Part shown: piece after piece, positions 10,760 through 54,175 of the stretch
Layout: each line of letters begins with the position of its first letter
Numbering within the stretch: position 1 is the first letter of the stretch
IMG/VR virus record: IMGVR_UViG_3300043446_005562
Coordinates: 1-64,000 of that record
Length of the DNA stretch: 64,000 nucleotides
Direction: 5' to 3' (one strand)
The notes under the pieces: model-generated
What the model was told of the DNA's origin: nothing
Seen by the model: only the letters and a program-made list of their open reading frames with translations
Database searches by the model: none
Program-made: the position numbers and the translations under genes

Positions 10760-10881
10760 TTGGCCTACTCAAACTCCTGAACCACGAGATCTGGCGTCAC
10801 TGCCGAAACTGTGGACTCCAATTCGATATTAGGGCCTCGGACCACTGCGACGGCTGCGGCCACGGTCCCCAGACCCCCTAG
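10756..10881 (+). CDS. 41-aa zinc-ribbon peptide (not in ORF track)
   Basis: MIGLLKLLNHEIWRHCRNCGLQFDIRASDHCDGCGHGPQTP. Confidence 0.55.
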   Translation: MIGLLKLLNHEIWRHCRNCGLQFDIRASDHCDGCGHGPQTP

Positions 10882-10940
10882 CCGGGCACCGGCCTAGTTA
10901 CCCCCGACGCGCCACCCCAAAAAAAAAAACCACGATAACA

Positions 10941-11162
10941 ATGAAAATCCAGAAAAATACCAAGGCTCCAACCGAGGCCCAGCTCATTGAGCTTGCAAAA
11001 CGCATGCTAGAGCTCTCCACCAAATTTCCCAACAACTACGACCTTGGCGAAAGGGTTCGCAGCCTTCACGAGCTTGCGGTTTCCAACCCCGATCTGCTGA
11101 TAAATAACCAGAAAGACCGCGACACAGATGAGTCGAATAAAACCATTCTTGGCCCACATTAA
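10941..11162 (+). CDS. hypothetical protein (73 aa)
   Basis: FPNNYDLGERVR motif seen in small phage proteins. Confidence 0.65.
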   Translation: MKIQKNTKAPTEAQLIELAKRMLELSTKFPNNYDLGERVRSLHELAVSNPDLLINNQKDRDTDESNKTILGPH

Positions 11163-11763
11163 CGAGAACGATAAGTTCAACCGCCTTAAACAACTGGGCC
11201 TCTCCCAAAACGACACCCCGCAGGAAACTTTCAGCCAGCTATCCGAGGTATTTCAAAATGATCCGCAGCTGAGCTCACTCTTCCAGCAGATCGATGCCCG
11301 CGTTGAAGAGCTCTTTGCTCCAATTCTGGCAAGAGCGGACGAGGAGTCGGATGAATGGCAGGAAATCATGGACGACATGGGCTGGAGCTGGGCCGAGGAT
11401 GCTGGGAACTACTGGATCTGGAACGCGATCTCTGGCTTTGGAGAAGGTGGCGGCATGTACGAATCAGAGGAACACCCAGAGCGTGAGCGCAATGTTGAAA
11501 GATTAAGAGGGCTAGGCCTTGCACCCAAAAAGGAATTCGATGAGCGTTGGGAAGAGATGATGGATGAATGGGGCTCGGATCCCGATATTGATAGGGCAAT
11601 CACAACGCTCAAGGCCAAGACCAACGAGATCATCGACAAGCACATTGACCTAGACGATTATGAGGACGAAGGTGAATGGAATGAGCGTGTTGATTGGATG
11701 TATCAAGCTAGCATTGACGATCTCGGCTTTTTTGAGTACATGGTTGCATCAGGCTCGCTATAA
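11128..11763 (+). CDS. acidic putative virion internal protein
   Basis: N-terminal MSRIKPFLAHINE leader; RLKQLGL and RLRGLGL motifs. Confidence 0.75.
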   Translation: MSRIKPFLAHINENDKFNRLKQLGLSQNDTPQETFSQLSEVFQNDPQLSSLFQQIDARVEELFAPILARADEESDEWQEIMDDMGWSWAEDAGNYWIWNAISGFGEGGGMYESEEHPERERNVERLRGLGLAPKKEFDERWEEMMDEWGSDPDIDRAITTLKAKTNEIIDKHIDLDDYEDEGEWNERVDWMYQASIDDLGFFEYMVASGSL

Positions 11764-35878: not shown

Positions 35879-36853
35879 TTAAACTAGAGTATTTTCAAAA
35901 GCTCTTTTATCATCAAATTCCAGGTAGTTTTCAAGTAGACTATTGGAATTTTGACGATACTTAAGTACAGCTAGATCCTTGGCCTTTGCCTCGACCTCGA
36001 TGTCAAAAGTGAGTCCATAAGTATTTATTTGCTCATAGACATAATCGGCATGGGACCTAGCAATAACACTTGGATCCTCGAAAGTTTTTCGACAGCTTGA
36101 GTAATGAGTGAGAGGAGTTCGACCGTGCCAAGTGGTTGAGGCAAGGCGCAGAGCAGCCTCCTCGGTAAGATCGCCGGTATTGAAGCGATGATGATGAAAG
36201 TCAAAGGTAATGGGTGTACCGATTTTAAGATAGACCATTGAATAGAGATCGGCCACCGAGTACTGGGCAGCCTTGTCATCGTTTTCGACAACTAGCCTGG
36301 CACGTGTACTGTGCTTAAGCAGATTGAAATTTTCGCAGAACCTGGCCGCAGCAGCTTCCTTGTCGCCATAGGATCCACCTAGATGAATATTGATTGGAAA
36401 TTGATAGTCAATCGGCAAGCCCATTAGGGTCATGATTTCTGCATGCTGATCAAGATCCTTGACTGTTTTGCGAACAACCGCTGGATTTGGAGAACACAAA
36501 ACATCGAACTGGCCCGGGTGCATTGAGATACGCATGTTGTGTTTTAGCACAAACTCGCCAATCGCCTGCATGTCCTGTAAAATAAAGTCAAAGTTGGGCA
36601 GCTCGGTGATTTCGTATTCGGACATCCACGGAAAAATATCGCTGGACATGCGATACACCATAATGTTGTTTGCAAGATTCCACTCAAGTATCTTGAGAAT
36701 GTCACGTACGTTTTGATGGGCAAGCTCGCCGCAGTAGGCTGGGCCCTTTTCTTGAAAGGTACGCTTGATCATACCACGATTGGCAGTGATGCGTTGGTCG
36801 GCTAGAGACAGATTAATACAGCAATAGCCAAGTCTGACGTTAGAATTTTGCAT
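35879..36853 (-). CDS. uvsE: UV-damage endonuclease (UvsE/UvdE)
   Basis: RLGYCCIN, RMSSDIFP, SMHPGQF, LVVENDD, FDFHHH, HAD, EAKAKD; start at ATG 36853. Confidence 0.95.
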   Translation of the reverse strand: MQNSNVRLGYCCINLSLADQRITANRGMIKRTFQEKGPAYCGELAHQNVRDILKILEWNLANNIMVYRMSSDIFPWMSEYEITELPNFDFILQDMQAIGEFVLKHNMRISMHPGQFDVLCSPNPAVVRKTVKDLDQHAEIMTLMGLPIDYQFPINIHLGGSYGDKEAAAARFCENFNLLKHSTRARLVVENDDKAAQYSVADLYSMVYLKIGTPITFDFHHHRFNTGDLTEEAALRLASTTWHGRTPLTHYSSCRKTFEDPSVIARSHADYVYEQINTYGLTFDIEVEAKAKDLAVLKYRQNSNSLLENYLEFDDKRAFENTLV

Positions 36854-36866
36854 AGGTTTAATATAC

Positions 36867-36891
36867 AAAAAAGAGGACGCTAAGGTCCTCT
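36867..36891 (-). terminator. intrinsic terminator
   Basis: AGAGGAC/GTCCTCT stem plus T-run on minus strand. Confidence 0.65.
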
Positions 36892-37754: not shown

Positions 37755-39179
37755 CTAATGTTTTACAGTAATGGTCTCAATCTGCAAATCGCCGAGGTGT
37801 TGACCGTTGTGCTTGTAGACAAAGACTTCGTACTTTTCGCTGGCCGGCACTGTGTATTCAAATGTGAATAGAGGTCGACCGTTCTTTAGTGGACGACAGC
37901 ACCCCTTTTCGCAAGATTCGCCCTGGACCTTGTGATCGCTACCAAAGAAAGTCATGTAGCCAGCAAAGCCCTCTGACGTAAGCATTGGCCAATCCTTGTC
38001 GGCATTGACATAGACCTCATAAACTCCTCTTGGTACCTTTGTGAATGATACAGTAATTTCAATTATTGCCTTATTGACAGTCGGCGCTGACTTGGCAGGC
38101 CTAATCGTTACGGCATCAGTTATTTGATCGTTTACTCGTATTGGGCGAGTTGACTGTCCAACCACTTGAGCTTTATGAAATTTTGCAAGCTGATGATTCT
38201 CACAAGGTCTGACCTCAGTGTCGTCGTAATCATAGTCCATTTCATACAGAATATCAATGATCTGTTCTGGCGTGTACTCAACTTTAGCGCCGTTTTCATC
38301 AAAGAAAACATAGGGCCACGGTGCAGATTTCAACTCTTCAAGAGTAACCTGCTGTCCATTTCTGGAATTGGTCCATTGCTGCCAGATTCTGTCAATATTG
38401 GAATGGTGCATCCAAAAGATGGGGTCAAAACCGGCGGTCGGCACCCAACCCATCAGTCCAGTGTTTGTGACTGTGCCGGTAATTGGATTATTAAAATGTA
38501 AATTACCCGTTACGTCGTTGCCCGCTCCTATGTAGTCGTGCATTGCACCGTGAGGAGCCGCATTGATTTGCAGATTGAATGATCGATAATCCGTGCACTC
38601 AAATAGTTTACCAAGGTATAGCGCTCTCTCAATTTCGCCAGAGATTGGATAGCCTCGATTCAAAGAGTCGAACCGACAGGCCTCATACAGGCTTGAATGA
38701 GGATCTCTAAAAGTTGCCTCTAGTCGTTTATGATCTTTCAGCCCACCCGTATAACCCCAATATGGTAACGCAAAATCTTTGTAACCGGAAAGGGTTCTGA
38801 CAATTTTTTCAAAATGATGAATGTAGAGTCGGTGCCAAACTAGAAAATGAATCTTCTCCTGTCCGCCTGGCGTGTGAGTGCAATTGTCCCAAGCCTCCTT
38901 TAAATCAGCTGGAGTTTGATAGGCATCGCATAGCGGATTGGGTTGAATTGTGTCCGGTATCCAATGAATCGCGCCCTGATAGTACCAACTTACGGGATCA
39001 ATGCAATTTTTGTTACGCATTATTCGTAATGCTTTTTCCATTGCCTGAATGTGGGGCACCGCCTCTGGCGAGTGCATTTCGTGTCGAACGTATCTCTTGT
39101 TATTAGAGGTCGGCCATTGACACGAGTGTAGGGCTGCAATTAGTACAACAATCCCAAATTTAATTAACGAATTTTTCAT
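37755..39179 (-). CDS. tyrosinase / polyphenol oxidase (type-3 copper), predicted lipoprotein
   Basis: CuA NCTH...HFLVWHRLY; CuB PHGAMHDYIG...FDPIFWMHHSNIDRIW; signal MKNSLIKFGIVVLIAALHS-C; start at ATG 39179. Confidence 0.9.
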   Translation of the reverse strand: MKNSLIKFGIVVLIAALHSCQWPTSNNKRYVRHEMHSPEAVPHIQAMEKALRIMRNKNCIDPVSWYYQGAIHWIPDTIQPNPLCDAYQTPADLKEAWDNCTHTPGGQEKIHFLVWHRLYIHHFEKIVRTLSGYKDFALPYWGYTGGLKDHKRLEATFRDPHSSLYEACRFDSLNRGYPISGEIERALYLGKLFECTDYRSFNLQINAAPHGAMHDYIGAGNDVTGNLHFNNPITGTVTNTGLMGWVPTAGFDPIFWMHHSNIDRIWQQWTNSRNGQQVTLEELKSAPWPYVFFDENGAKVEYTPEQIIDILYEMDYDYDDTEVRPCENHQLAKFHKAQVVGQSTRPIRVNDQITDAVTIRPAKSAPTVNKAIIEITVSFTKVPRGVYEVYVNADKDWPMLTSEGFAGYMTFFGSDHKVQGESCEKGCCRPLKNGRPLFTFEYTVPASEKYEVFVYKHNGQHLGDLQIETITVKH

Positions 39180-39192
39180 ACTGTGATATTTT

Positions 39193-39606
39193 TTAAAAAG
39201 GTAGATCATCATTGCTCCAGTCGAAATTGGTCTCGGCTTGAGGTTTTGTTTTTGTGTCAAGATCACCGAATGCGTCATCGTCAAAGTCGCCAGCATCAGC
39301 CGTTACGTTGATGTTTGAGTTCTTTTTCTGACCGCTGATTCGCCAAGCTTCAAGCGTCGTGAAGTACTTTACCGAACCTAATTTGTCGGTCCAGTCACGG
39401 CCCTTTATGTCAAATGAAACGGTTACGGTGTCGCCAACTGAGTAAGATTCCAACATATCACATTTTTCTTGCACAAGTTGGAATAGAATTTTTTGTGGGT
39501 ACTTATCTCCCACCTCAATTACGAATTCACGTTTACGGAATCCCTTATTGAAAGTTTGCGATGGAAAAATCTCAATGATGATTCCGGTTAAATCAAATTT
39601 GCTCAT
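39193..39606 (-). CDS. DUF3127 OB-fold protein (SSB-like, Bacteroidota-type)
   Basis: GFRKREFVIE..KYPQ.I.FQL, VSFDIKGRDW, YFTTLEAWRI, C-terminal DDLPF. Confidence 0.88.
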   Translation of the reverse strand: MSKFDLTGIIIEIFPSQTFNKGFRKREFVIEVGDKYPQKILFQLVQEKCDMLESYSVGDTVTVSFDIKGRDWTDKLGSVKYFTTLEAWRISGQKKNSNINVTADAGDFDDDAFGDLDTKTKPQAETNFDWSNDDLPF

Positions 39607-40090: not shown

Positions 40091-41383
40091 TTAAAATTCG
40101 CGATGTGTTTCATATACTGTTTTTATAACTGGAAATCTGAGTGAATGATTTCCGTGTTGATCTGTTGTCTCTTCAAAGAATTGCACGGTAATTGTTTTAC
40201 CTAGAATATCATTTGGGTTTTGAAAATAGTGTCGACGCTGTTCAAGCGAAAAGCCTGAACCCACTCTAACCTGATTGCCCCTGTGCTGCACAAAAACGGC
40301 CTTTAGCATTTCCTCCTCCTCTTCGCGCTCGTTTACGATAACCCTGTGAGTTCCCATCTCCAAGCCAGTCACCTCATACTCGGCATCGTGCATTTTTTTG
40401 ACCTTGAGTAGATTCTTTGAGCGCTTGCCCTCATAACCCACATCCTTACGAATCATGATGCCTTCATAGCCCATTTCGGTTGCATCAGCCGCGACCTTTT
40501 CAAAATGCTCGCGATCGACTAATTTGAACTGTGGCAACGGCTCAGCAAACTGTAGGCCAGATTCAATTAAGAAACCGTTTAGCATTATCAGTCTAGCCGA
40601 AAGAGTTATCTCACTTGAGCCAGCGGTAAATTCGTCAAGCTCTAATAGATCAAACACATAGTACTTTGGGGTTTCGATTGTGTGATCCTTTTTGCCGATC
40701 TCCTTGATTATTCCCTGGAAATCTTCAAGGCCGGACTCTCGCATGATACAAACCTCGCCGTCTAAAACCTTGGATCGAAGCCCTAATTTCATGAGATCCT
40801 GACGTAAGTTATCTAGGGTTAAGAATTCCTTGCCCTGTCTAGAAAAGAACTTGATCTGACCTGCCTCATCAATTACTGTGATGCAGCGAACTCCATCCAG
40901 CTTGCGGCTTGCCCACCACATACCCGAATCAAAGTCCACCTTCTTCTCGGCAGATTCAAACTTTTCAGCTAGGGCAACTTCAAATGTTGGTACCGTGCCC
41001 GGCAGAACTGAATTGATTAGTGTAGAAGTTGCTCTAGTTTTTATGTTGCGATCTATCACATCATAGATGATGTCTGCAAATTCCTGATATTTTAAGATAA
41101 AACCATTAACTGCCTGTATTGCAGTGTGGCCAGTCACACGACGTTCATTCAGATCATCGAGCATTTCAAACAGATCTAAATAATTATCAGAAATTAGATC
41201 GGATCTCTTTTTAAGATTGGCTGAAGTAACGTGGTACTGCTTAAACGGCGTGTACGTGTACTTAAATATTTTTCGTAGAAACGGAGAATCGTATTTTAAT
41301 AAAATCTCTTTTTTGGCATTCGTCGAAGACGTTGCCTTCATCTCTTCAATGAATTCTCTAAGTTTAATAAAATCAGTTTGCAT
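40091..41383 (-). CDS. ATP-dependent DNA ligase
   Basis: SRKLDGVRC, LDGEV, VFD, EGIMIR, LLKVK, RFP. Confidence 0.95.
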   Translation of the reverse strand: MQTDFIKLREFIEEMKATSSTNAKKEILLKYDSPFLRKIFKYTYTPFKQYHVTSANLKKRSDLISDNYLDLFEMLDDLNERRVTGHTAIQAVNGFILKYQEFADIIYDVIDRNIKTRATSTLINSVLPGTVPTFEVALAEKFESAEKKVDFDSGMWWASRKLDGVRCITVIDEAGQIKFFSRQGKEFLTLDNLRQDLMKLGLRSKVLDGEVCIMRESGLEDFQGIIKEIGKKDHTIETPKYYVFDLLELDEFTAGSSEITLSARLIMLNGFLIESGLQFAEPLPQFKLVDREHFEKVAADATEMGYEGIMIRKDVGYEGKRSKNLLKVKKMHDAEYEVTGLEMGTHRVIVNEREEEEEMLKAVFVQHRGNQVRVGSGFSLEQRRHYFQNPNDILGKTITVQFFEETTDQHGNHSLRFPVIKTVYETHREF

Positions 41384-44449: not shown

Positions 44450-45574
44450 ATGAAATATCTATTTGAATTTGCTCAGTATTCGTCAACTGGTTCGACCGAG
44501 TCCTCATTTGGTGTGCTTGGTGATTTGGGCAAAGACTCAAAGTTTGGCGAGCAGACCGGCTATTTCAAGAGCCTAATGCAGGAGGCCCAGGCCAGGGGAA
44601 TGGATGCGTTTGTCTTTACCGAATTTAGCCCAACCGGCGTGACTGCCTGGCAACTAAACGGCGATGATTGGGCCGAGTCTACTCGAGCAATACCTGGAGT
44701 ATTTTACGATCGAAGTTTCCGAAAAAAGAATGGAGCTGGCAAAACCTCAAATACTCGGGCCCTGTGCTCGCTTGGCTCAACTCCAATCAATTCACCGGAT
44801 TTTAGAAAACTTGCGCTCGACAAACACCTGATGTACGAGAATCTTAAGAATCACGAAATTGACGGCATGGGCTTGCCACATACTCAAAAGTTTAGTGAGG
44901 ACTCGACCATTGGCTTTTTAGAAAAGTGGCCGACTGCCATTTTAAAACCCAGGTTTGGGTCAGGCGGTCAAGGCATCATAAAGATCGCAAAGACCGGCAC
45001 CGATTATTCTCTTAACTACAAGGATCATTCATTAAGCTGTCAGGCTCATGAATTGAAAAACAAGATCAATGAGATTCGTCAAAAGATGAATTCCGATAAG
45101 CGACTCTATATTATTCAGGAGTGCATTGACCTGCCCAAATACAATAACGGGGTTTTTGACGTTAGGGTGATTTATCAGAAAGGCAAGGGTGGCAGCCCGC
45201 TTAGAACGGGCATGGCGGTCAGGCTCGCAGCACCAAATAAAGTAACAGCAAATCTGCACCAAGGCGGCAGCAGAGAAACTCTTGGCACAGTATTGGGCGA
45301 GCTGTTCAATCAGGACATGAACGGCCAGATAGCTGAGTCGATTCGCAAATACTCAAAACAGATATTTGAAATTCTAGACGATCGAGTTGGTCCAATTGGC
45401 GAAGTCGGTATTGACTTTTTGATTGATCAAACTGGCAAGGTGCACCTTATTGAGGTTAATTCCGTGCCCGGCCGAAATCTATTTCATATTTTGCCGGACA
45501 TTCGCCAGACCGCAATAAAGAGACCTGTTGAATACGCACAACACCTACTTGAAAAACAAAAAAAGTCGCACTAG
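44450..45574 (+). CDS. ATP-grasp ligase, YheC/YheD-like
   Basis: DKHLMY, ILKPRFGSGGQGI, IIQECI, FDVRV, NLHQGG, GIDFLID, IEVNSVPG. Confidence 0.88.
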   Translation: MKYLFEFAQYSSTGSTESSFGVLGDLGKDSKFGEQTGYFKSLMQEAQARGMDAFVFTEFSPTGVTAWQLNGDDWAESTRAIPGVFYDRSFRKKNGAGKTSNTRALCSLGSTPINSPDFRKLALDKHLMYENLKNHEIDGMGLPHTQKFSEDSTIGFLEKWPTAILKPRFGSGGQGIIKIAKTGTDYSLNYKDHSLSCQAHELKNKINEIRQKMNSDKRLYIIQECIDLPKYNNGVFDVRVIYQKGKGGSPLRTGMAVRLAAPNKVTANLHQGGSRETLGTVLGELFNQDMNGQIAESIRKYSKQIFEILDDRVGPIGEVGIDFLIDQTGKVHLIEVNSVPGRNLFHILPDIRQTAIKRPVEYAQHLLEKQKKSH

Positions 45575-49986: not shown

Positions 49987-51048
49987 TTAGAGGTGACTAG
50001 CTATTTGGGTCAGGATTTTAAAGTAGTCTGAGCTCGAACAGTCAGACAAAAACTTGCTGATTTCAAAAAAGTCTTCTACTGTATCGAATGACATGGCCGG
50101 ATGAAATCTCGGATCTCGATATGAAACTGGAATTGTACCAAAGATGACAGATTCATAAACTCTCGCTGGTGTGAACTTCTGTTCAAGATAAAGATCCTTG
50201 CTCACATTTACTGATACTTGAGCAAGTTGCATACTTTGCCAAATGGTGGCCCTGTCTGCTCGTGAGCACAAGGCAACACGCTTCATACCAGCAAGCCACG
50301 ATTCAAGAGCGGGGTCCTGCTTTGCAGCAAGTAACATTGAGAATGGAGTGCCATCAAATTTTGAAGTTTCATCAACTGCTGAAATAATGTCCCTAATTAT
50401 CGGATTCTTTGAATGACCCTCTTTGTAATTAACAAATGAAAGATTGCCGTAATACACTAGATAATTTGGCACCTTGTTTGCGGATTTTTCATGAACCGCC
50501 AGACATTCATTAATGAATTGCTGACTGCAGCCTGGCATCGTAATTGATGGAATTTGTCTGGTGATTCCCAACTTGGAGATTGTATCTACGAAGGTTTGAG
50601 GTAGAGAAAGATCCGTATCTAGAATAACAATATCGGCCGGGTTATAACCGGTTTGAAGTGCAAGCTCAATAATTCTTTCAAAGTAGGCTGCGTCCTTTAA
50701 TTTTTTTTGCAGAGTTGAAAGATTTCTAAATCTGGCTTTTAAAAATATTTTTGAGTAGCGCTTATTTCTAATATTTTCAATTACTTGACCTGAGCCTATT
50801 TGATATTCATCAATCAAGCTGTCTGAAAATTTGGTGAAGACCTTTCCTAACGGATCCCTTGGAAAGACTGGTTTAGAGGTTGAGTCGCCTATTGGATTAA
50901 CATAATTCAAAAAGTCAAACTTTTCAACTCCATACATTTTTGAAAGTTCATCAATCAGACCCAATTGATAAAATGTGTGGCCTGGAATATCATCATTGAA
51001 TAATCCTAATTGGCCAAAGTAGGCGTAGAGTGCTTTGTTCGTTTCCAT
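49987..51048 (-). CDS. GT-B glycosyltransferase resembling T4 DNA beta-glucosyltransferase
   Basis: ILDTDLSLP, LVYYGNLSF and FTPARVYESV align by eye with recalled T4 BGT YLFTDIRLP, VIYGGSFR and ITLRVWETM; similar length (353 aa). Confidence 0.6.
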   Translation of the reverse strand: METNKALYAYFGQLGLFNDDIPGHTFYQLGLIDELSKMYGVEKFDFLNYVNPIGDSTSKPVFPRDPLGKVFTKFSDSLIDEYQIGSGQVIENIRNKRYSKIFLKARFRNLSTLQKKLKDAAYFERIIELALQTGYNPADIVILDTDLSLPQTFVDTISKLGITRQIPSITMPGCSQQFINECLAVHEKSANKVPNYLVYYGNLSFVNYKEGHSKNPIIRDIISAVDETSKFDGTPFSMLLAAKQDPALESWLAGMKRVALCSRADRATIWQSMQLAQVSVNVSKDLYLEQKFTPARVYESVIFGTIPVSYRDPRFHPAMSFDTVEDFFEISKFLSDCSSSDYFKILTQIASHL

Positions 51049-51425
51049 AATACGTATTTTACTAGGACTCCATCATTTGGTTCTATATCAAGTCGATTAT
51101 TGTAGAAAATATCCCAAGAGTCTGCCGCGTATTGACCAATTCCATAGAGCTCACGCGGGTGAGTCCACGGTCTTTCAAGCCACTCGGTGCTAAACCTAAT
51201 TAGGGATTTAGCTCGACGATTATAGAAACCCAGAGGTCTCAGTATTTCAGACAATTGAGCCGAGTCCGCCTGTGACATTGCTTGCGCGCTAGGATACTTG
51301 GTGAAAAGCTCATCCCTAATTCGATCCACTTGAACTCTTCTGGTGCAATTCAATAAAATACAACAGACCTGAGATTTCCAAGGATCCTTATGATAGATTT
51401 CTTGAAGTAATTGAAATGGACTCAT
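51006..51425 (-). CDS. MBD4-like HhH-GPD DNA glycosylase (T/U:G mismatch type)
   Basis: DPWK..VCCILLN.T, KYPSA, LRPLGFYNRRAK, ELYGIGQYAADSWDIF with catalytic Asp retained. Confidence 0.88.
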   Translation of the reverse strand: MSPFQLLQEIYHKDPWKSQVCCILLNCTRRVQVDRIRDELFTKYPSAQAMSQADSAQLSEILRPLGFYNRRAKSLIRFSTEWLERPWTHPRELYGIGQYAADSWDIFYNNRLDIEPNDGVLVKYVLWKRTKHSTPTLAN

Positions 51426-52226
51426 TTACACGTTTTTAAAACCGGCAAAGTGAGTAATAAAATGTTTGTTCGTGGCAGCGCTGCGATTAACAAAGATTCT
51501 GTCAAAATTATTCTCCATAATTGACATTACTTCATTAAATTTAGCTAGTCGATTTTCAAGCAACCAGCTATAGTGAAAATGATACTCGACAATGAATAGT
51601 TTAATGTGACTCCAATCAGTAATTGACTTAATCATTTCATATTCCATGCCCTCAATGTCCATCTTTACACAGTTAACCTTTTTAAGCACGTCATTGATAT
51701 TTTCAGCTGGGACATGTACGACTTTACGGCCCTTCACTGGATGAACTGAGTGTTTACCTGAATCCTGTGATAAAAAGAATTCAACCTCAGATTCGTGGCC
51801 AGGTACAATTGCCTTTTCAATAATTTCACAACGATCCTGCACACCATTCATTTCCAAATTCTGTTGAGCAAATTCAACATTATTATGGAAAGGTTCATAG
51901 GAGTACACCTTCTTGATTCGTGGAAATTGGGTCAATAGTCTAGTTGCAAAAATACCGATGTGTGCACCAGCGTCTAACCAAGTATCCTCCTGATTGAGAT
52001 CTTCTAGGGTCAGCGGATTGCCGTCCTGTGCATAATGCGGTAAAAATAGGGGTTTAAAATACTCTCCACCGGTTGGCTTCATCGAGATATTTTGAGACAC
52101 GTTAAATTTTATTTCGTCTTCTGAGCGAACTAAAAATTGATATTCGTGGTATTTAGTTTTCTTTTCAAAAACTTGAAGGGTTCCTGCTTCACGAGCTTCC
52201 TCAATCGAGCATAATACGTCTGCCAT
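51426..52226 (-). CDS. FkbM-family SAM-dependent methyltransferase
   Basis: WLDAGAHIG, YEP, KMDIEGME, VEYH. Confidence 0.9.
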   Translation of the reverse strand: MADVLCSIEEAREAGTLQVFEKKTKYHEYQFLVRSEDEIKFNVSQNISMKPTGGEYFKPLFLPHYAQDGNPLTLEDLNQEDTWLDAGAHIGIFATRLLTQFPRIKKVYSYEPFHNNVEFAQQNLEMNGVQDRCEIIEKAIVPGHESEVEFFLSQDSGKHSVHPVKGRKVVHVPAENINDVLKKVNCVKMDIEGMEYEMIKSITDWSHIKLFIVEYHFHYSWLLENRLAKFNEVMSIMENNFDRIFVNRSAATNKHFITHFAGFKNV

Positions 52227-52259: not shown

Positions 52260-52556
52260 TTACTTATCTTGGTCTAGATTGAATGGAGTATCTTTGATTG
52301 AAAGTTTGCTCTGGTCGTCTTTGTTTACTCCAGATATTTGATAATCAGAATCTTTTGGCTTCTCTAATTTTTCAATATCTGTTGCTTTTACTCTGAGCAT
52401 ACGGTTGTCTGAAGTCATTATTTGATAGACACCGTTGGTTGGATCGGTTCCGACAATTCTACCGGTACGGCCATCATTAAGGACGATTCGATTACCGGCT
52501 TTGTACTTAGATGAGGTTGGAGAGACTAGTGTAATGTCCTCAGCCTCATTTAGGCT
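52260..52556 (-). CDS. start-less 98-aa reading frame continuing gene 52550-54088 in the -1 frame (SH3/KOW-like)
   Basis: SLNEAEDITLVSPTSSKYKAGNRIVLNDGRTGRIVGTDPTNGVYQIMTSDNRMLRVKATDIEKLE...; begins at an A9 run. Confidence 0.55.
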   Translation of the reverse strand, partial: SLNEAEDITLVSPTSSKYKAGNRIVLNDGRTGRIVGTDPTNGVYQIMTSDNRMLRVKATDIEKLEKPKDSDYQISGVNKDDQSKLSIKDTPFNLDQDK

Positions 52557-54088
52557 TTTTTTTTGGACTGGTCCAATGAAATGTAATGATTACGTAGAGA
52601 GTTTACGTTTTTCTCAATTGAGATTTTTAAATCATTTAATTGAGTTTGATATTCTTCAGAAAGAGATTGATCCTTTAGGGCTTCTTCAATTTGACTAATT
52701 GATTTTTCCAATTTAGTTAGATCGCTTTCAACAAGTTTTTTCTCTTCATCGATTTGACGCAATTGCTTTTCGCGCTCTTCCAATTCAATCTCATAAAGAT
52801 CGCTAACGTCATAGTTGAAATTTTCCATAACGTAATTATGGAATGTTAAACCTTCCATTTTCTTAATGATTCTGCTTTGGCCGTACTTCTCAAAAACATA
52901 AAGAGTTTCGCCCATTGTAAAAACGATTGAATCAGCGTTTAATCTTTCGTTAACTAATTTCTTAGCAAATTCTAAATTAACTATCATGTCTAATCCTCTG
53001 AATAGAGTTGTTAATTTAGAACGAGTTTCCAACTGTTCCATTAAGAAGATTTCAGATAATTCAATTTTAGTTAAATCTTCAACAACTGAACCGTTTATCT
53101 TTAGGTAAAGAGTATTGTCTTCGTTTACTGCAAATACAACCTCTAGCCCACGACCACGTGATACGATTTCGTTTTCACGATCTTGGAAGTTTAGACCAGC
53201 AAAGGCTTCGCAAACTTCAAAAAATTCTGGATACTCTTCAAGCTCTTGTGCAGTTACTTGAACTGGATCTTGATCTTCTTCTAATTTTATGAATTTATTA
53301 TCAACAAAAACGATTGCAGCGGATTCAGATATTTTACAGAAAGGAGCGATCATTGACTTAACTTTAGCATCTCCATTACCGATTCCAATATTGAATTTAC
53401 CAGCAACCTTTGCCTCAAACATGCTCAAAGAATTAATTAATCGATTGATGATTGGCATTGCTGGCTTATTACGCATTTTCATCTTTACAGTATCAGCTGT
53501 AAAAGTATTCTCAAGAAGACAATTTTCCAATTCTGCGATTGCTTCACGGTATAAAATTGCACCAGTTTGTCTCATTTCAAAAATAGCATTGATTACCTCT
53601 AATTTTGAACGATTTTCATTAACATAATCAGTTACTTCTTGAATTGTAGCAGCAACAGTTGAATCATACGAGTATGGAGTCAACGCCTCTAGTAGATGGC
53701 CGATTGCTCTAAATTCAGGTTGAGCAGCTATGCGCTGTTCAACTAGAGAAATTGAGTATTTAAAAGTAGGATCCTTGTAGATTTTTGACTCTTTAAGGGC
53801 TTTGATTTTTAAAGATATGCCAGCCTCTCTTGCCATGTTCTGCAAACGCTGGGTTGGTTTTTCTGCTAATTTCTTGAATTTAGCAACAATCTCTTTAAGA
53901 TTTTCATTTAAAGTAGCTGTTGCAAGCTCAGATAGGGTAGACAGAGTATTCTCTAGGATTTGATCAGATGGAACTCCTAGTAATACTGAATTATTTATGG
54001 ATTCAAGCATAACTTTTACAGCAACGCTATCTTTAACGCTTGGATTGGATTTTAACTCTAGTGTTAATTCTTGTATGAGACTGTTCAT
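52550..54088 (-). CDS. acidic coiled-coil structural protein, possible prohead scaffold
   Basis: Many (L/I/V)xE sites; late promoter at 54111. Confidence 0.7.
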   Translation of the reverse strand: MNSLIQELTLELKSNPSVKDSVAVKVMLESINNSVLLGVPSDQILENTLSTLSELATATLNENLKEIVAKFKKLAEKPTQRLQNMAREAGISLKIKALKESKIYKDPTFKYSISLVEQRIAAQPEFRAIGHLLEALTPYSYDSTVAATIQEVTDYVNENRSKLEVINAIFEMRQTGAILYREAIAELENCLLENTFTADTVKMKMRNKPAMPIINRLINSLSMFEAKVAGKFNIGIGNGDAKVKSMIAPFCKISESAAIVFVDNKFIKLEEDQDPVQVTAQELEEYPEFFEVCEAFAGLNFQDRENEIVSRGRGLEVVFAVNEDNTLYLKINGSVVEDLTKIELSEIFLMEQLETRSKLTTLFRGLDMIVNLEFAKKLVNERLNADSIVFTMGETLYVFEKYGQSRIIKKMEGLTFHNYVMENFNYDVSDLYEIELEEREKQLRQIDEEKKLVESDLTKLEKSISQIEEALKDQSLSEEYQTQLNDLKISIEKNVNSLRNHYISLDQSKKKA

Positions 54089-54175
54089 TGAACCGGGTGT
54101 CTTTTTTTGTTATTTATTTGGCACGTTCGCTAACTTTATTTATCTGTGAACGCCGATTGTTATTTTGGTATTGGG

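What the first reader, a model, noticed from the sequence alone, without database searches (positions are those of the whole stretch)
52260..52570. A9 run at the end of a scaffold-like gene opens a 98-aa extension in the -1 frame
Seen: the gene ends TCC AAA AAA AAA GCC TAA. One extra A, or a -1 slip on A-AAA-AAA, gives ...KKK-SLNEAEDITL... and a clean SH3/KOW-like domain with no start codon of its own. An AGCCT/AGGCT hairpin overlaps the end of the run, and the junction creates an LNE protease-type site. Known: A9 runs cause transcriptional slippage, and XXXYYYZ heptamers cause -1 frameshifting. Inference: two isoforms at a set ratio, the long one releasing a small domain on head maturation. 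A homopolymer assembly error is the alternative.
Basis: partly seen in the sequence, partly recalled or inferred. Interest (0 to 1): 0.6.

Follow-up and report, generated by a model that had tools for sequence, protein, structure and literature searches.

The report
Conserved A9 slippage site, jumbo phage
A run of nine A's at the end of a late gene in a freshwater T4-like jumbo phage is a real recoding signal, conserved across distant relatives, that lets one gene make a 512-residue protein and a 609-residue version carrying an extra small beta-barrel domain; the mechanism is a known kind, but this protein family is new to it.

Summary
The minus-strand gene 52550-54088 (512 aa) ends TCC AAA AAA AAA GCC TAA. 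The -1 frame then runs 98 codons with no usable start and folds as an SH3/Tudor/KOW-like barrel.

It is not an assembly error. All 31 related viral contigs (50-82% aa identity) keep the run, an early stop in both other frames, and a coding extension. So do four sampled lineages of deeper branches (22-51% identity). There the run sits in the same or another phase, and once inside the barrel domain.

Only the run's Lys codons are frozen as AAA. Other invariant Lys codons mix AAA and AAG. No flanking RNA structure is conserved.

Natural A10 alleles give an in-frame 609-aa protein, and many distant relatives carry the barrel in frame. The two parts therefore form one polypeptide.

For one relative, the DNA co-assembly shows A9 and the cDNA co-assembly from the same lakes shows A10.

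Best reading: programmed slippage, probably by RNA polymerase, with ribosomal -1 shifting not excluded. The scaffold, protease-release and hairpin ideas are unsupported. This is a new member of a known kind, of moderate interest.

The parts
52550..54088 (-). Main ORF, 512 aa (P0001). It has a helical N-terminal half (~1-230), beta-rich middle domains (~240-412) and a C-terminal helical hairpin (429-511). It ends S-K-K-K-A-stop.
   Evidence: exactly 512 codons in all 31 related viral contigs
52556..52564 (-). A9 slippage site (T9 on the plus strand). In the zero frame it reads AAA AAA AAA, which also forms the heptamer A_AAA_AAA.
   Evidence: Relatives carry A9 in 28 of 31 contigs and A8G (A_AAA_AAG) in 3. 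The three run Lys codons are AAA in 12/12, 12/12 and 11/12 lineages, while the nine other invariant Lys codons all mix AAA and AAG.
52550..52552 (-). Zero-frame stop TAA, one codon after the run. It ends the short isoform.
   Evidence: a stop within 1-5 codons of the run in all split relatives
52546..52548 (-). TGA stop in the third frame (AAG CCT AAA TGA). Transcripts with -1 or +2 A also give a short product.
   Evidence: the third frame stops within 1-6 codons in all 20 sequences examined
52260..52556 (-). The -1 frame extension: 98 codons (P0002) plus stop TAA at 52260-52262. Joined after KKK it gives a 609-aa product.
   Evidence: Third-position excess of substitutions (1622/1068/2482 by codon position). 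Natural in-frame 609-aa relatives exist.
52362..52499 (-). Core of the small five-stranded beta-barrel (extension residues ~20-65), SH3/Tudor/KOW-like.
54136..54144 (-). GATAAATAA motif 47 nt upstream of the start. It resembles a late promoter (compare the T4 late TATAAATA).
   Evidence: Conserved upstream of the gene in all relatives shown. The genome has 20 copies against ~6 expected. Eighteen lie within 90 nt upstream of same-strand ORFs, including the tail sheath and head protease genes.
54110..54117 (-). Second ATAAATAA copy, 22-29 nt upstream of the ATG.

Best explanation
The A9 run is a programmed recoding site in a late gene of a T4-like jumbo myovirus. Its host is SD-less and probably belongs to the Bacteroidota.

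Copying the template faithfully gives the 512-aa protein, which stops one codon after the run. A fraction of molecules gain one A (A10). The frame then runs on through 98 more codons to give a 609-aa isoform. Its extra C-terminal part is a short acidic linker plus an SH3/Tudor/KOW-like barrel.

The extra base is most likely added by RNA polymerase slipping on the 9-bp A:T hybrid. Both other frames stop within a few codons. Every other slippage product (A8, A11, A12) therefore still gives a short-form-like protein, the same logic as Thermus dnaX.

Shown:
- The signal and the extension are conserved, and the extension is under coding constraint.
- The two parts form one polypeptide in natural in-frame relatives.
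- A cDNA assembly of a close relative carries A10 where DNA assemblies carry A9.

Inferred:
- The step is transcriptional.
- The isoform ratio matters.
- The protein is virion-associated.

The confidence given (0.6) is for the full statement including the transcriptional step. That the run is a conserved recoding site making two isoforms I hold at about 0.9.
For: 1. Conservation in close relatives. All 31 related viral contigs (50-82% aa identity) have a 512-codon zero frame. It ends KKK, one codon, stop, and an 87-102 aa extension follows in the -1 frame.
2. Conservation in deeper lineages. Branches at 28-33% identity (L049-L051) have A9 plus an SH3-like -1 extension. L057 (51% identity) has A9 shifted by one phase. 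In L059 (22%) the A9G run lies inside the barrel domain, so the gene caller splits a domain.
3. Run length is kept at 9 (8 in one clade) whatever the phase. A run of 7 would suffice for a ribosomal heptamer.
4. Synonymous freezing is specific to the run.
5. No conserved RNA structure lies downstream or upstream. There are no SD-like stimulators, and genes of this phage lack SD (5 of 192).
6. Both non-extension frames stop within 1-6 codons in all 20 sequences.
7. A10 alleles arose at least 5 times but only on tips or in one very shallow clade, while A9 spans the whole tree.
8. DNA against cDNA in one strain. The DNA co-assembly IMG 3300010885 (L006) and two other DNA assemblies (L002, L025) have A9. 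The contig from the metatranscriptome co-assembly of the same lakes, IMG 3300013295 (L061), has A10 and otherwise differs by only 2 substitutions in 3,194 nt. Sample types come from bioRxiv 10.1101/324970.
9. One river RNA library has a contig with A11, and another contig breaks exactly at the run. A DNA run has A9 and a second RNA run has A9.
10. Bacterial RNA polymerase slips efficiently on runs of 9 A or T, giving mRNAs with one or more extra A (Atkins et al. 2016, PMC5009743).
Against: - No raw-read pileup was possible. All runs were available only as contigs, which drop minority variants.
- The window's own RNA evidence is one A9 contig and one low-depth A11 contig (depth 2.6 of 5). A10 was not seen for the window's own strain.
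- The cDNA A10 contig is a single observation in a relative. It could come from reverse-transcriptase or PCR slippage, from DNA carry-over of an A10 genomic variant, or from assembly.
- Every version of the site also contains a valid -1 heptamer (A_AAA_AAA, A_AAA_AAG or A_AAA_AAC). One clade has the classic A_AAA_AAG with only 8 A's, which fits ribosomal shifting better.
- No peptide data exist.
Confidence: 0.6

Rival explanations
1. Ribosomal slippage. The mRNA is a faithful A9 copy. A fraction of ribosomes shift -1 on A_AAA_AAA (tandem tRNA-Lys re-pairing), or slide on the iterated AAA codons, and so read into the extension.
For: A canonical X_XXY_YYZ heptamer sits in the zero frame in every split relative. 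The L028-L030 clade has A_AAA_AAG with only 8 A's, and L059 has A_AAA_AAG followed directly by TGA. A_AAA_AAG is the most shift-prone heptamer in E. coli (PMC5009743). Ribosomes slide on iterated AAA codons (PMC4363877, abstract). Phage frameshift sites such as lambda G/GT give a small set proportion of shifted product (30:1; PMC5009743).
Against: The run length of 9 is kept even when its phase relative to the zero frame changes (L057, L059), although 7 would do. No downstream or upstream stimulator is conserved. A cDNA assembly shows A10 where DNA shows A9, and an RNA-library contig shows A11. Recurrent A10 alleles would invert the isoform ratio under pure ribosomal shifting. Both mechanisms may operate together.
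Confidence: 0.27
2. DNA-level phase variation. The run is a contingency tract, and replication slippage toggles genomes between A9 (short protein only) and A10 (long protein only). Isoforms would then differ between virions, not within one infection.
For: A9 and A10 alleles both exist in DNA assemblies. One A10 population was found in many samples (index lists 39 blocks). Near-identical A9/A10 pairs exist (P0005/P0006; P0020 and P0023 against P0019/P0022).
Against: A9 is the state in every 512-aa-clade contig examined apart from the recent A10 alleles, and in the four deeper lineages whose DNA was read. A10 never persists beyond very short branches. Yet the extension shows coding constraint comparable to the main gene, so it must be expressed from A9 genomes. 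Early stops kept in both other frames make sense for slippage within one infection.
Confidence: 0.05
3. Artefact or two genes. Either the true sequence is A10 and A9 is a homopolymer assembly error, or the extension is a separate small gene with its own start.
For: Homopolymers are error-prone. Some gene callers list short genes after the stop.
Against: A9 appears in dozens of independent assemblies, in an independent DNA run and in an RNA run. No start codon is conserved, and the most conserved residues (1-12) precede any candidate start. In L028-L030 the extension has no ATG or GTG at all, and the -1 frame is closed 6 nt upstream. In L059 the split falls inside a folded domain. In-frame relatives exist.
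Confidence: 0.02

Closest known systems
Thermus thermophilus dnaX (tau/gamma) transcriptional slippage on a run of nine
   Same: A bare 9-nt A/T homopolymer inside a coding region with no structure needed. Stops lie close by in both alternative frames, so all out-of-register transcripts give the short product. Two isoforms share an N-terminus (PMC5009743).
   Different: There the template frame encodes the long product and slippage gives the short one. Here the template encodes the short product and +1 A gives the long one. The protein family is different, this is a phage late gene, and mRNA heterogeneity is only hinted at by assemblies here.
E. coli dnaX -1 ribosomal frameshift at A_AAA_AAG
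   Same: A lysine-codon heptamer. One clade of this family carries exactly A_AAA_AAG, and L059 has A_AAA_AAG followed by a stop.
   Different: dnaX uses an upstream SD-like element and a downstream stem-loop. None is conserved here, and the host appears not to use SD.
Phage structural proteins with a C-terminal domain added by frameshifting (T7 gene 10A/10B, T3 coat, Ig-like domains of Lactobacillus phage A2 and Listeria phages)
   Same: A minority isoform of a late phage protein gains a small folded C-terminal domain from another frame. In relatives the same domain can be in frame or out of frame (PMC5009743).
   Different: The domain is an SH3/Tudor/KOW-like barrel, not Ig-like. The carrier is an uncharacterised 512-aa protein, not a known coat or tail protein. 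The site is a long homopolymer, and the split is ancient and held under selection rather than sporadic.
Shigella spa13/mxiE and Citrobacter tssM transcriptional frameshifting
   Same: RNA polymerase slippage on an A/T run gives a proportion of product with a functional C-terminal extension, or two length variants (PMC5009743; PMC4256274).
   Different: Those are bacterial secretion-system genes. No relation in sequence or function.
Lambda gpG/gpGT tail assembly chaperone frameshift
   Same: A conserved phage recoding event that sets a fixed ratio of short and extended products.
   Different: The site is different (G_GGA_AAG). The position in the tail module is known, whereas this gene is not next to a tape-measure gene and is far larger.

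Membership tests
Programmed transcriptional slippage site (Thermus dnaX type) | Homopolymeric A/T run of about 9 within the coding region, with length conserved | tested here: met
   A9 in the window and in 28 of 31 close relatives, plus four deeper lineages in two different phases. A8G in one clade.
Programmed transcriptional slippage site (Thermus dnaX type) | Stops close by in the alternative frames, so only one register gives the long product | tested here: met
   Both non-extension frames stop within 1-6 codons in all 20 sequences.
Programmed transcriptional slippage site (Thermus dnaX type) | mRNA population heterogeneous in run length while the DNA is homogeneous | tested here: inconclusive
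   cDNA co-assembly contig has A10 against A9 in DNA assemblies of the same strain of a relative. One RNA-library contig has A11 and another has A9. Only contigs were available, with no read counts.
Programmed -1 ribosomal frameshift cassette | X_XXY_YYZ heptamer in the zero frame | tested here: met
   A_AAA_AAA in the window; A_AAA_AAG or A_AAA_AAC in some relatives.
Programmed -1 ribosomal frameshift cassette | Conserved stimulator (downstream stem-loop or pseudoknot, or upstream SD-like element) | tested here: not met
   RNAalifold predicts 0 conserved pairs downstream and upstream. The window hairpin scores z -0.92. There is no SD-like element, and SD is generally absent from this genome.
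Programmed -1 ribosomal frameshift cassette | Trans-frame peptide made from unedited mRNA | not testable with these tools
   Needs proteomics plus mRNA sequencing.
T4-type prohead scaffold/core protein cleaved by the gp21-like protease | Similarity to known scaffold or core proteins | tested here: not met
   No Pfam, PHROG, PDB-sequence or PDB-fold match. Only the generic helical hairpin matches.
T4-type prohead scaffold/core protein cleaved by the gp21-like protease | Position in the head module next to the protease and major capsid genes | tested here: not met
   The protease (660-aa ORF, 161268-163250) and gp23-like capsid gene (159538-161250) are more than 100 kb away. The protease ORF's own ~430-aa tail occupies the scaffold position.
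T4-type prohead scaffold/core protein cleaved by the gp21-like protease | Conserved (L/I)xE cleavage motif at the processing point | tested here: inconclusive
   L/I-x-E follows KKK in all close relatives and in L049-L051. Family-wide, [LIVM]xE occurs in 61 of 97 against a 49% background. Cleavage itself is untested.
SH3 / Tudor / KOW small beta-barrel domains | Five-stranded barrel fold | tested here: met
   Model core pLDDT above 90. Best matches are PHF1/PHF19 Tudor and NusG/Spt5 KOW (TM 0.7 by target, Z 7.0-7.7, rmsd 1.2-1.5 A over ~50 residues). The scores are borderline.
SH3 / Tudor / KOW small beta-barrel domains | Membership of a curated sequence family | tested here: not met
   No Pfam family reaches its cut-off. 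The best are KOWx_SPT5 at E 0.1 and Tudor_5 at E 0.005 in single members.

The most novel reading that the evidence does not exclude
This would be the first conserved, selected use of RNA-polymerase slippage in a tailed-phage late gene. A whole family of jumbo-phage proteins (357 representative clusters) shares a core and coiled coil followed by a variable C-terminal module. In several lineages of the family an A9 run acts as a tunable valve that sets how many copies carry the module. Lineages move between split (A9), fused (A10 or in frame) and differently placed sites. The core may be a capsid-targeting or scaffold-like carrier, and the barrel or larger modules may be cargo released by the T4-type prohead protease at the conserved LxE just after the run.
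Probability: 0.15. Interest if true: 0.75.

Novelty: new member of a known kind. Interest (0 to 1): 0.58.

Why it matters
Gene callers miss this event. In public annotations the extension is left unannotated or called as small fragments (44-60 aa) or as one separate 209-aa gene, and in one clade the call splits a folded domain.

The site is a clean natural case for telling transcriptional from ribosomal slippage, for three reasons:
- The host group ignores Shine-Dalgarno signals.
- The signal is a bare homopolymer.
- Natural A8G, A9, A10 and in-frame variants already exist as controls.

It also marks an uncharacterised, widespread late protein family of T4-like jumbo phages. The family reaches Lak megaphages by sequence and Tenacibaculum phages by fold only. 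Its C-terminal module appears to be dosed, which gives a handle for finding out what the family does.

Tried and rejected
Function of the 512-aa protein:
- Pfam, PHROGs, a PDB sequence profile, Foldseek against PDB, VIA wide, the ESM Atlas fold search and the Atlas feature search all gave nothing beyond a generic helical hairpin.
- BFVD gave only uncharacterised phage proteins, plus weak fold matches to Tenacibaculum phages PTm1 and pT24. Two profile searches of the PTm1 genome found no sequence homologue, and PTm1's annotation is mostly hypothetical.
- Neighbouring genes have no family or PDB hits.
- blastn and tblastn against the phage collection with the window's gene found nothing.

Genome identity:
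- An NCLDV origin was considered because of the tyrosinase, UvdE and ATP-dependent ligase genes. It was rejected: no NCLDV capsid was found (though that search had no positive control), while T4-type capsid, portal, protease, terminase and sheath genes are present.

Ideas about the site that failed:
- Family-wide enrichment of a protease motif at the junction.
- Two other A8 runs near gene ends (168458 and 181343) show no extension in another frame.

Limits of the data:
- The sample type of the JGI 3300032285 A10 contig could not be established.
- No alternative genetic code was used.
Full report
WHAT IS THERE

The gene lies on the minus strand at 52550-54088. It encodes 512 residues (P0001) and ends TCC AAA AAA AAA GCC TAA. 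The A9 run is window 52556-52564. The -1 frame is open from 52589 to 52260. After the run it encodes 98 residues (P0002, beginning SLNEAEDITLV), ending at TAA 52260-52262. A one-base gain in the run, or a -1 shift on A_AAA_AAA, gives KKK-SLNE... and a 609-residue product. The extension has no ATG, GTG or TTG before residue 47.

THE GENOME

The window is the first 64 kb of a 252,618-bp IMG/VR virus record, estimated 93% complete, with 41% G+C.
- It is a T4-like jumbo myovirus. It carries a gp23-type major capsid gene, a gp20-type portal and an S77 prohead protease.
- Its terminase, sheath, baseplate and head-completion proteins are about 30% identical to those of Tenacibaculum phage PTm1.
- It has 19 tRNA genes, none for lysine.
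- Only 5 of 192 ORFs of 150 aa or more have an SD-like core upstream. This points to a host that does not use Shine-Dalgarno pairing, as in Bacteroidia (PMC10798248).
- An NCLDV origin was considered because of the tyrosinase, UvdE and ATP-dependent ligase genes. It was dropped (and the T4-type genes above).

NOT AN ERROR, NOT TWO GENES

A scan of viral contigs found 31 loci encoding relatives at 50-82% identity.
- In every locus the zero frame is exactly 512 codons and ends KKK, one codon, stop. The -1 frame then runs 87-102 codons, and the protein sequence it encodes is conserved across relatives.
- Twenty-eight loci have A9. Three (L028-L030, 50% identity) have TCT AAA AAA AAG GCC TAA, which is A_AAA_AAG. 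In those three the -1 frame is closed by TAA six bases upstream and the extension holds no ATG or GTG. An independent start is therefore impossible there.
- Substitutions in the extension fall 1622/1068/2482 on codon positions 1/2/3 of the -1 frame. The main gene shows the same pattern (8811/4727/14450).
- An independent DNA run and an RNA run both hold contigs with A9 across the site.

SELECTION ON THE RUN ITSELF

Among 12 representative lineages only 18 of 512 third positions are invariant. The nine invariant lysine codons outside the run all mix AAA and AAG. The three codons in the run are AAA in 12, 12 and 11 lineages. The run is also the only A/T homopolymer of 9 or more inside an ORF of 100 aa or more in the genome. 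The other two are an intergenic A11 and the T-tract of a bidirectional terminator.

DEPTH OF CONSERVATION

The family is large: 357 representative clusters at E below 0.001. Four deeper lineages keep the arrangement:
- Lineages at 28-33% identity (L049, L050, L051) also have A9, a zero-frame stop 2-4 codons later, and a -1 extension of 85-93 residues with the same barrel motif.
- L057 (51% identity) has GCA AAA AAA AAC TTT TAA. The run is still 9 but shifted by one phase.
- L059 (22% identity, on the Lak-megaphage side of the family) has GGA AAA AAA AAG TGA. There the run sits between the first and second strands of the barrel domain, so the annotated stop cuts a domain in two.

Many other members carry the barrel, or much longer C-terminal regions (up to 1,820 aa), in frame directly after the coiled coil. 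The two parts are therefore one polypeptide, and the split has been kept or re-made in several places.

A10 ALLELES

Thirteen of about 100 clusters from the word search are 609 aa. Their DNA has A10 and is otherwise collinear. On a tree of 97 family proteins the split/fused label needs at least 5-6 changes. All A10 forms in the 512-aa clade sit on tips or in one very shallow clade (branches of 0.02 or less), while A9 spans the tree. A10 therefore arises often and does not last. This argues that the short form must remain the main product.

WHICH STEP SLIPS

No RNA structure is conserved within ~95 nt downstream or 65 nt upstream of the run. There is no SD-like element. Both non-extension frames stop within 1-6 codons in all 20 sequences. 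This is the layout of Thermus dnaX, where RNA polymerase slips on a run of nine and all out-of-register mRNAs give the short product (PMC5009743).

Two pieces of direct evidence bear on the question.
- L061 is a 3,194-nt contig from IMG 3300013295. It carries A10 and differs from L006 (IMG 3300010885), L025 and L002, all A9, by only two substitutions. The source paper states that 3300010885 is the metagenome co-assembly and 3300013295 the metatranscriptome co-assembly of the same Quebec lakes (bioRxiv 10.1101/324970).
- In a river RNA library, one contig ends exactly at the end of the run and another carries two extra bases (A11, depth 2.6 of 5). A second RNA library has A9.

These fit a ladder of transcript lengths, but they are assemblies, not counts. 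Reverse-transcriptase or PCR slippage and DNA carry-over cannot be excluded. Every version of the site is also a valid -1 heptamer, and the A8G clade fits ribosomal shifting better. I put transcriptional slippage at about 0.6 and ribosomal shifting or sliding at about 0.27. Both may act together.

WHAT THE PROTEIN IS

This remains unknown. The model (pLDDT 78) has a helical N-terminal half, beta-rich middle domains and a C-terminal helical hairpin. Nothing in Pfam, PHROGs, PDB or the Atlas matches beyond that hairpin. BFVD returns only uncharacterised phage proteins.

The gene is probably late. A GATAAATAA motif (compare the T4 late TATAAATA) is conserved upstream in all relatives. It occurs 20 times in the genome against about 6 expected. 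Eighteen copies lie within 90 nt upstream of same-strand ORFs, including the sheath and head protease genes. In L059 the neighbours are gp15-like (weak) and gp2-like.

The scaffold idea is not supported. The head protease is a 660-aa ORF whose roughly 430-aa tail sits immediately upstream of the capsid gene, more than 100 kb from this locus. An L/I-x-E motif follows the run in close relatives and a T4-type protease is present. Across the family, however, the motif is barely above background. The extension's barrel resembles Tudor, KOW and SH3-like domains at borderline scores and joins no Pfam family. What it binds is unknown.

VERDICT

This is a real and anciently conserved recoding site. It makes a major 512-aa and a minor 609-aa isoform of an uncharacterised late protein. 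The kind of mechanism is known, so it is a new member of a known kind. It has unusually good natural controls and a hint from cDNA that the polymerase, not the ribosome, does the slipping.

Noticed in passing
window 54136-54144 and 54110-54117 (minus strand); genome-wide in G000: A GATAAATAA motif occurs 20 times against ~6 expected. Eighteen copies lie within 90 nt upstream of same-strand ORFs, including the tail sheath (two copies) and the head protease ORF. It is probably the late promoter of this phage group and is conserved upstream of the gene in all relatives.
   Followed up: partly
window 10800-10945: A G+C-rich stretch ends in an A11 run (10919-10929), just upstream of a possible ATG. 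A GATAAATAA motif sits at 11099, before ORF 11128-11763. This is the longest homopolymer in the genome and it is intergenic.
   Followed up: no
window 37755-39296 (minus strand): A 513-aa ORF has a tyrosinase central domain (Pfam E 2e-25), which is unusual in a phage. It sits among UvdE (35879-36868), an ATP-dependent DNA ligase (40091-41383) and a YheC/D-type ATP-grasp gene (44450-45574). The ORF overlaps the next ORF (39193-39606) by ~100 nt.
   Followed up: no
G000 161268-163250 (outside the window; L060 1869-3851): A 660-aa ORF has a head maturation protease in residues ~29-233 and a ~430-aa tail, directly upstream of the gp23-like capsid gene. This is a likely protease-scaffold fusion.
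   Followed up: partly
G000 211168-228787: A cluster of 19 tRNA genes with none for lysine. SD-like cores lie upstream of only 5 of 192 ORFs, which points to an SD-independent (Bacteroidota-like) host.
   Followed up: partly
G000 178980-179015: A bidirectional intrinsic terminator: an A-tract, a GGAGGAC/GTCCTCC stem, then T9. It accounts for the only other T9 in the genome.
   Followed up: yes
L059 3040-3110: In a 22%-identical relative the A9G run lies inside the barrel domain. Public gene calls start a separate 209-aa gene at a GTG right after the run, which is a mis-annotation caused by the recoding site.
   Followed up: yes
window 50701-50708; G000 165955, 168458, 181343: Four A8 runs lie inside ORFs, two of them close to gene ends. 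No extension in another frame was seen at the two that were checked.
   Followed up: partly
L062 998-1007 (JGI 3300032285): Another short contig has A10 in a ~70%-identical relative. Its sample type (DNA or RNA) could not be established.
   Followed up: partly
window 51006-51425 and 51426-52226 (minus strand): Downstream neighbours are an FkbM-type methyltransferase and a small HhH-GPD-like ORF. This order is conserved with the slippage gene even in relatives at 28-33% identity.
   Followed up: no
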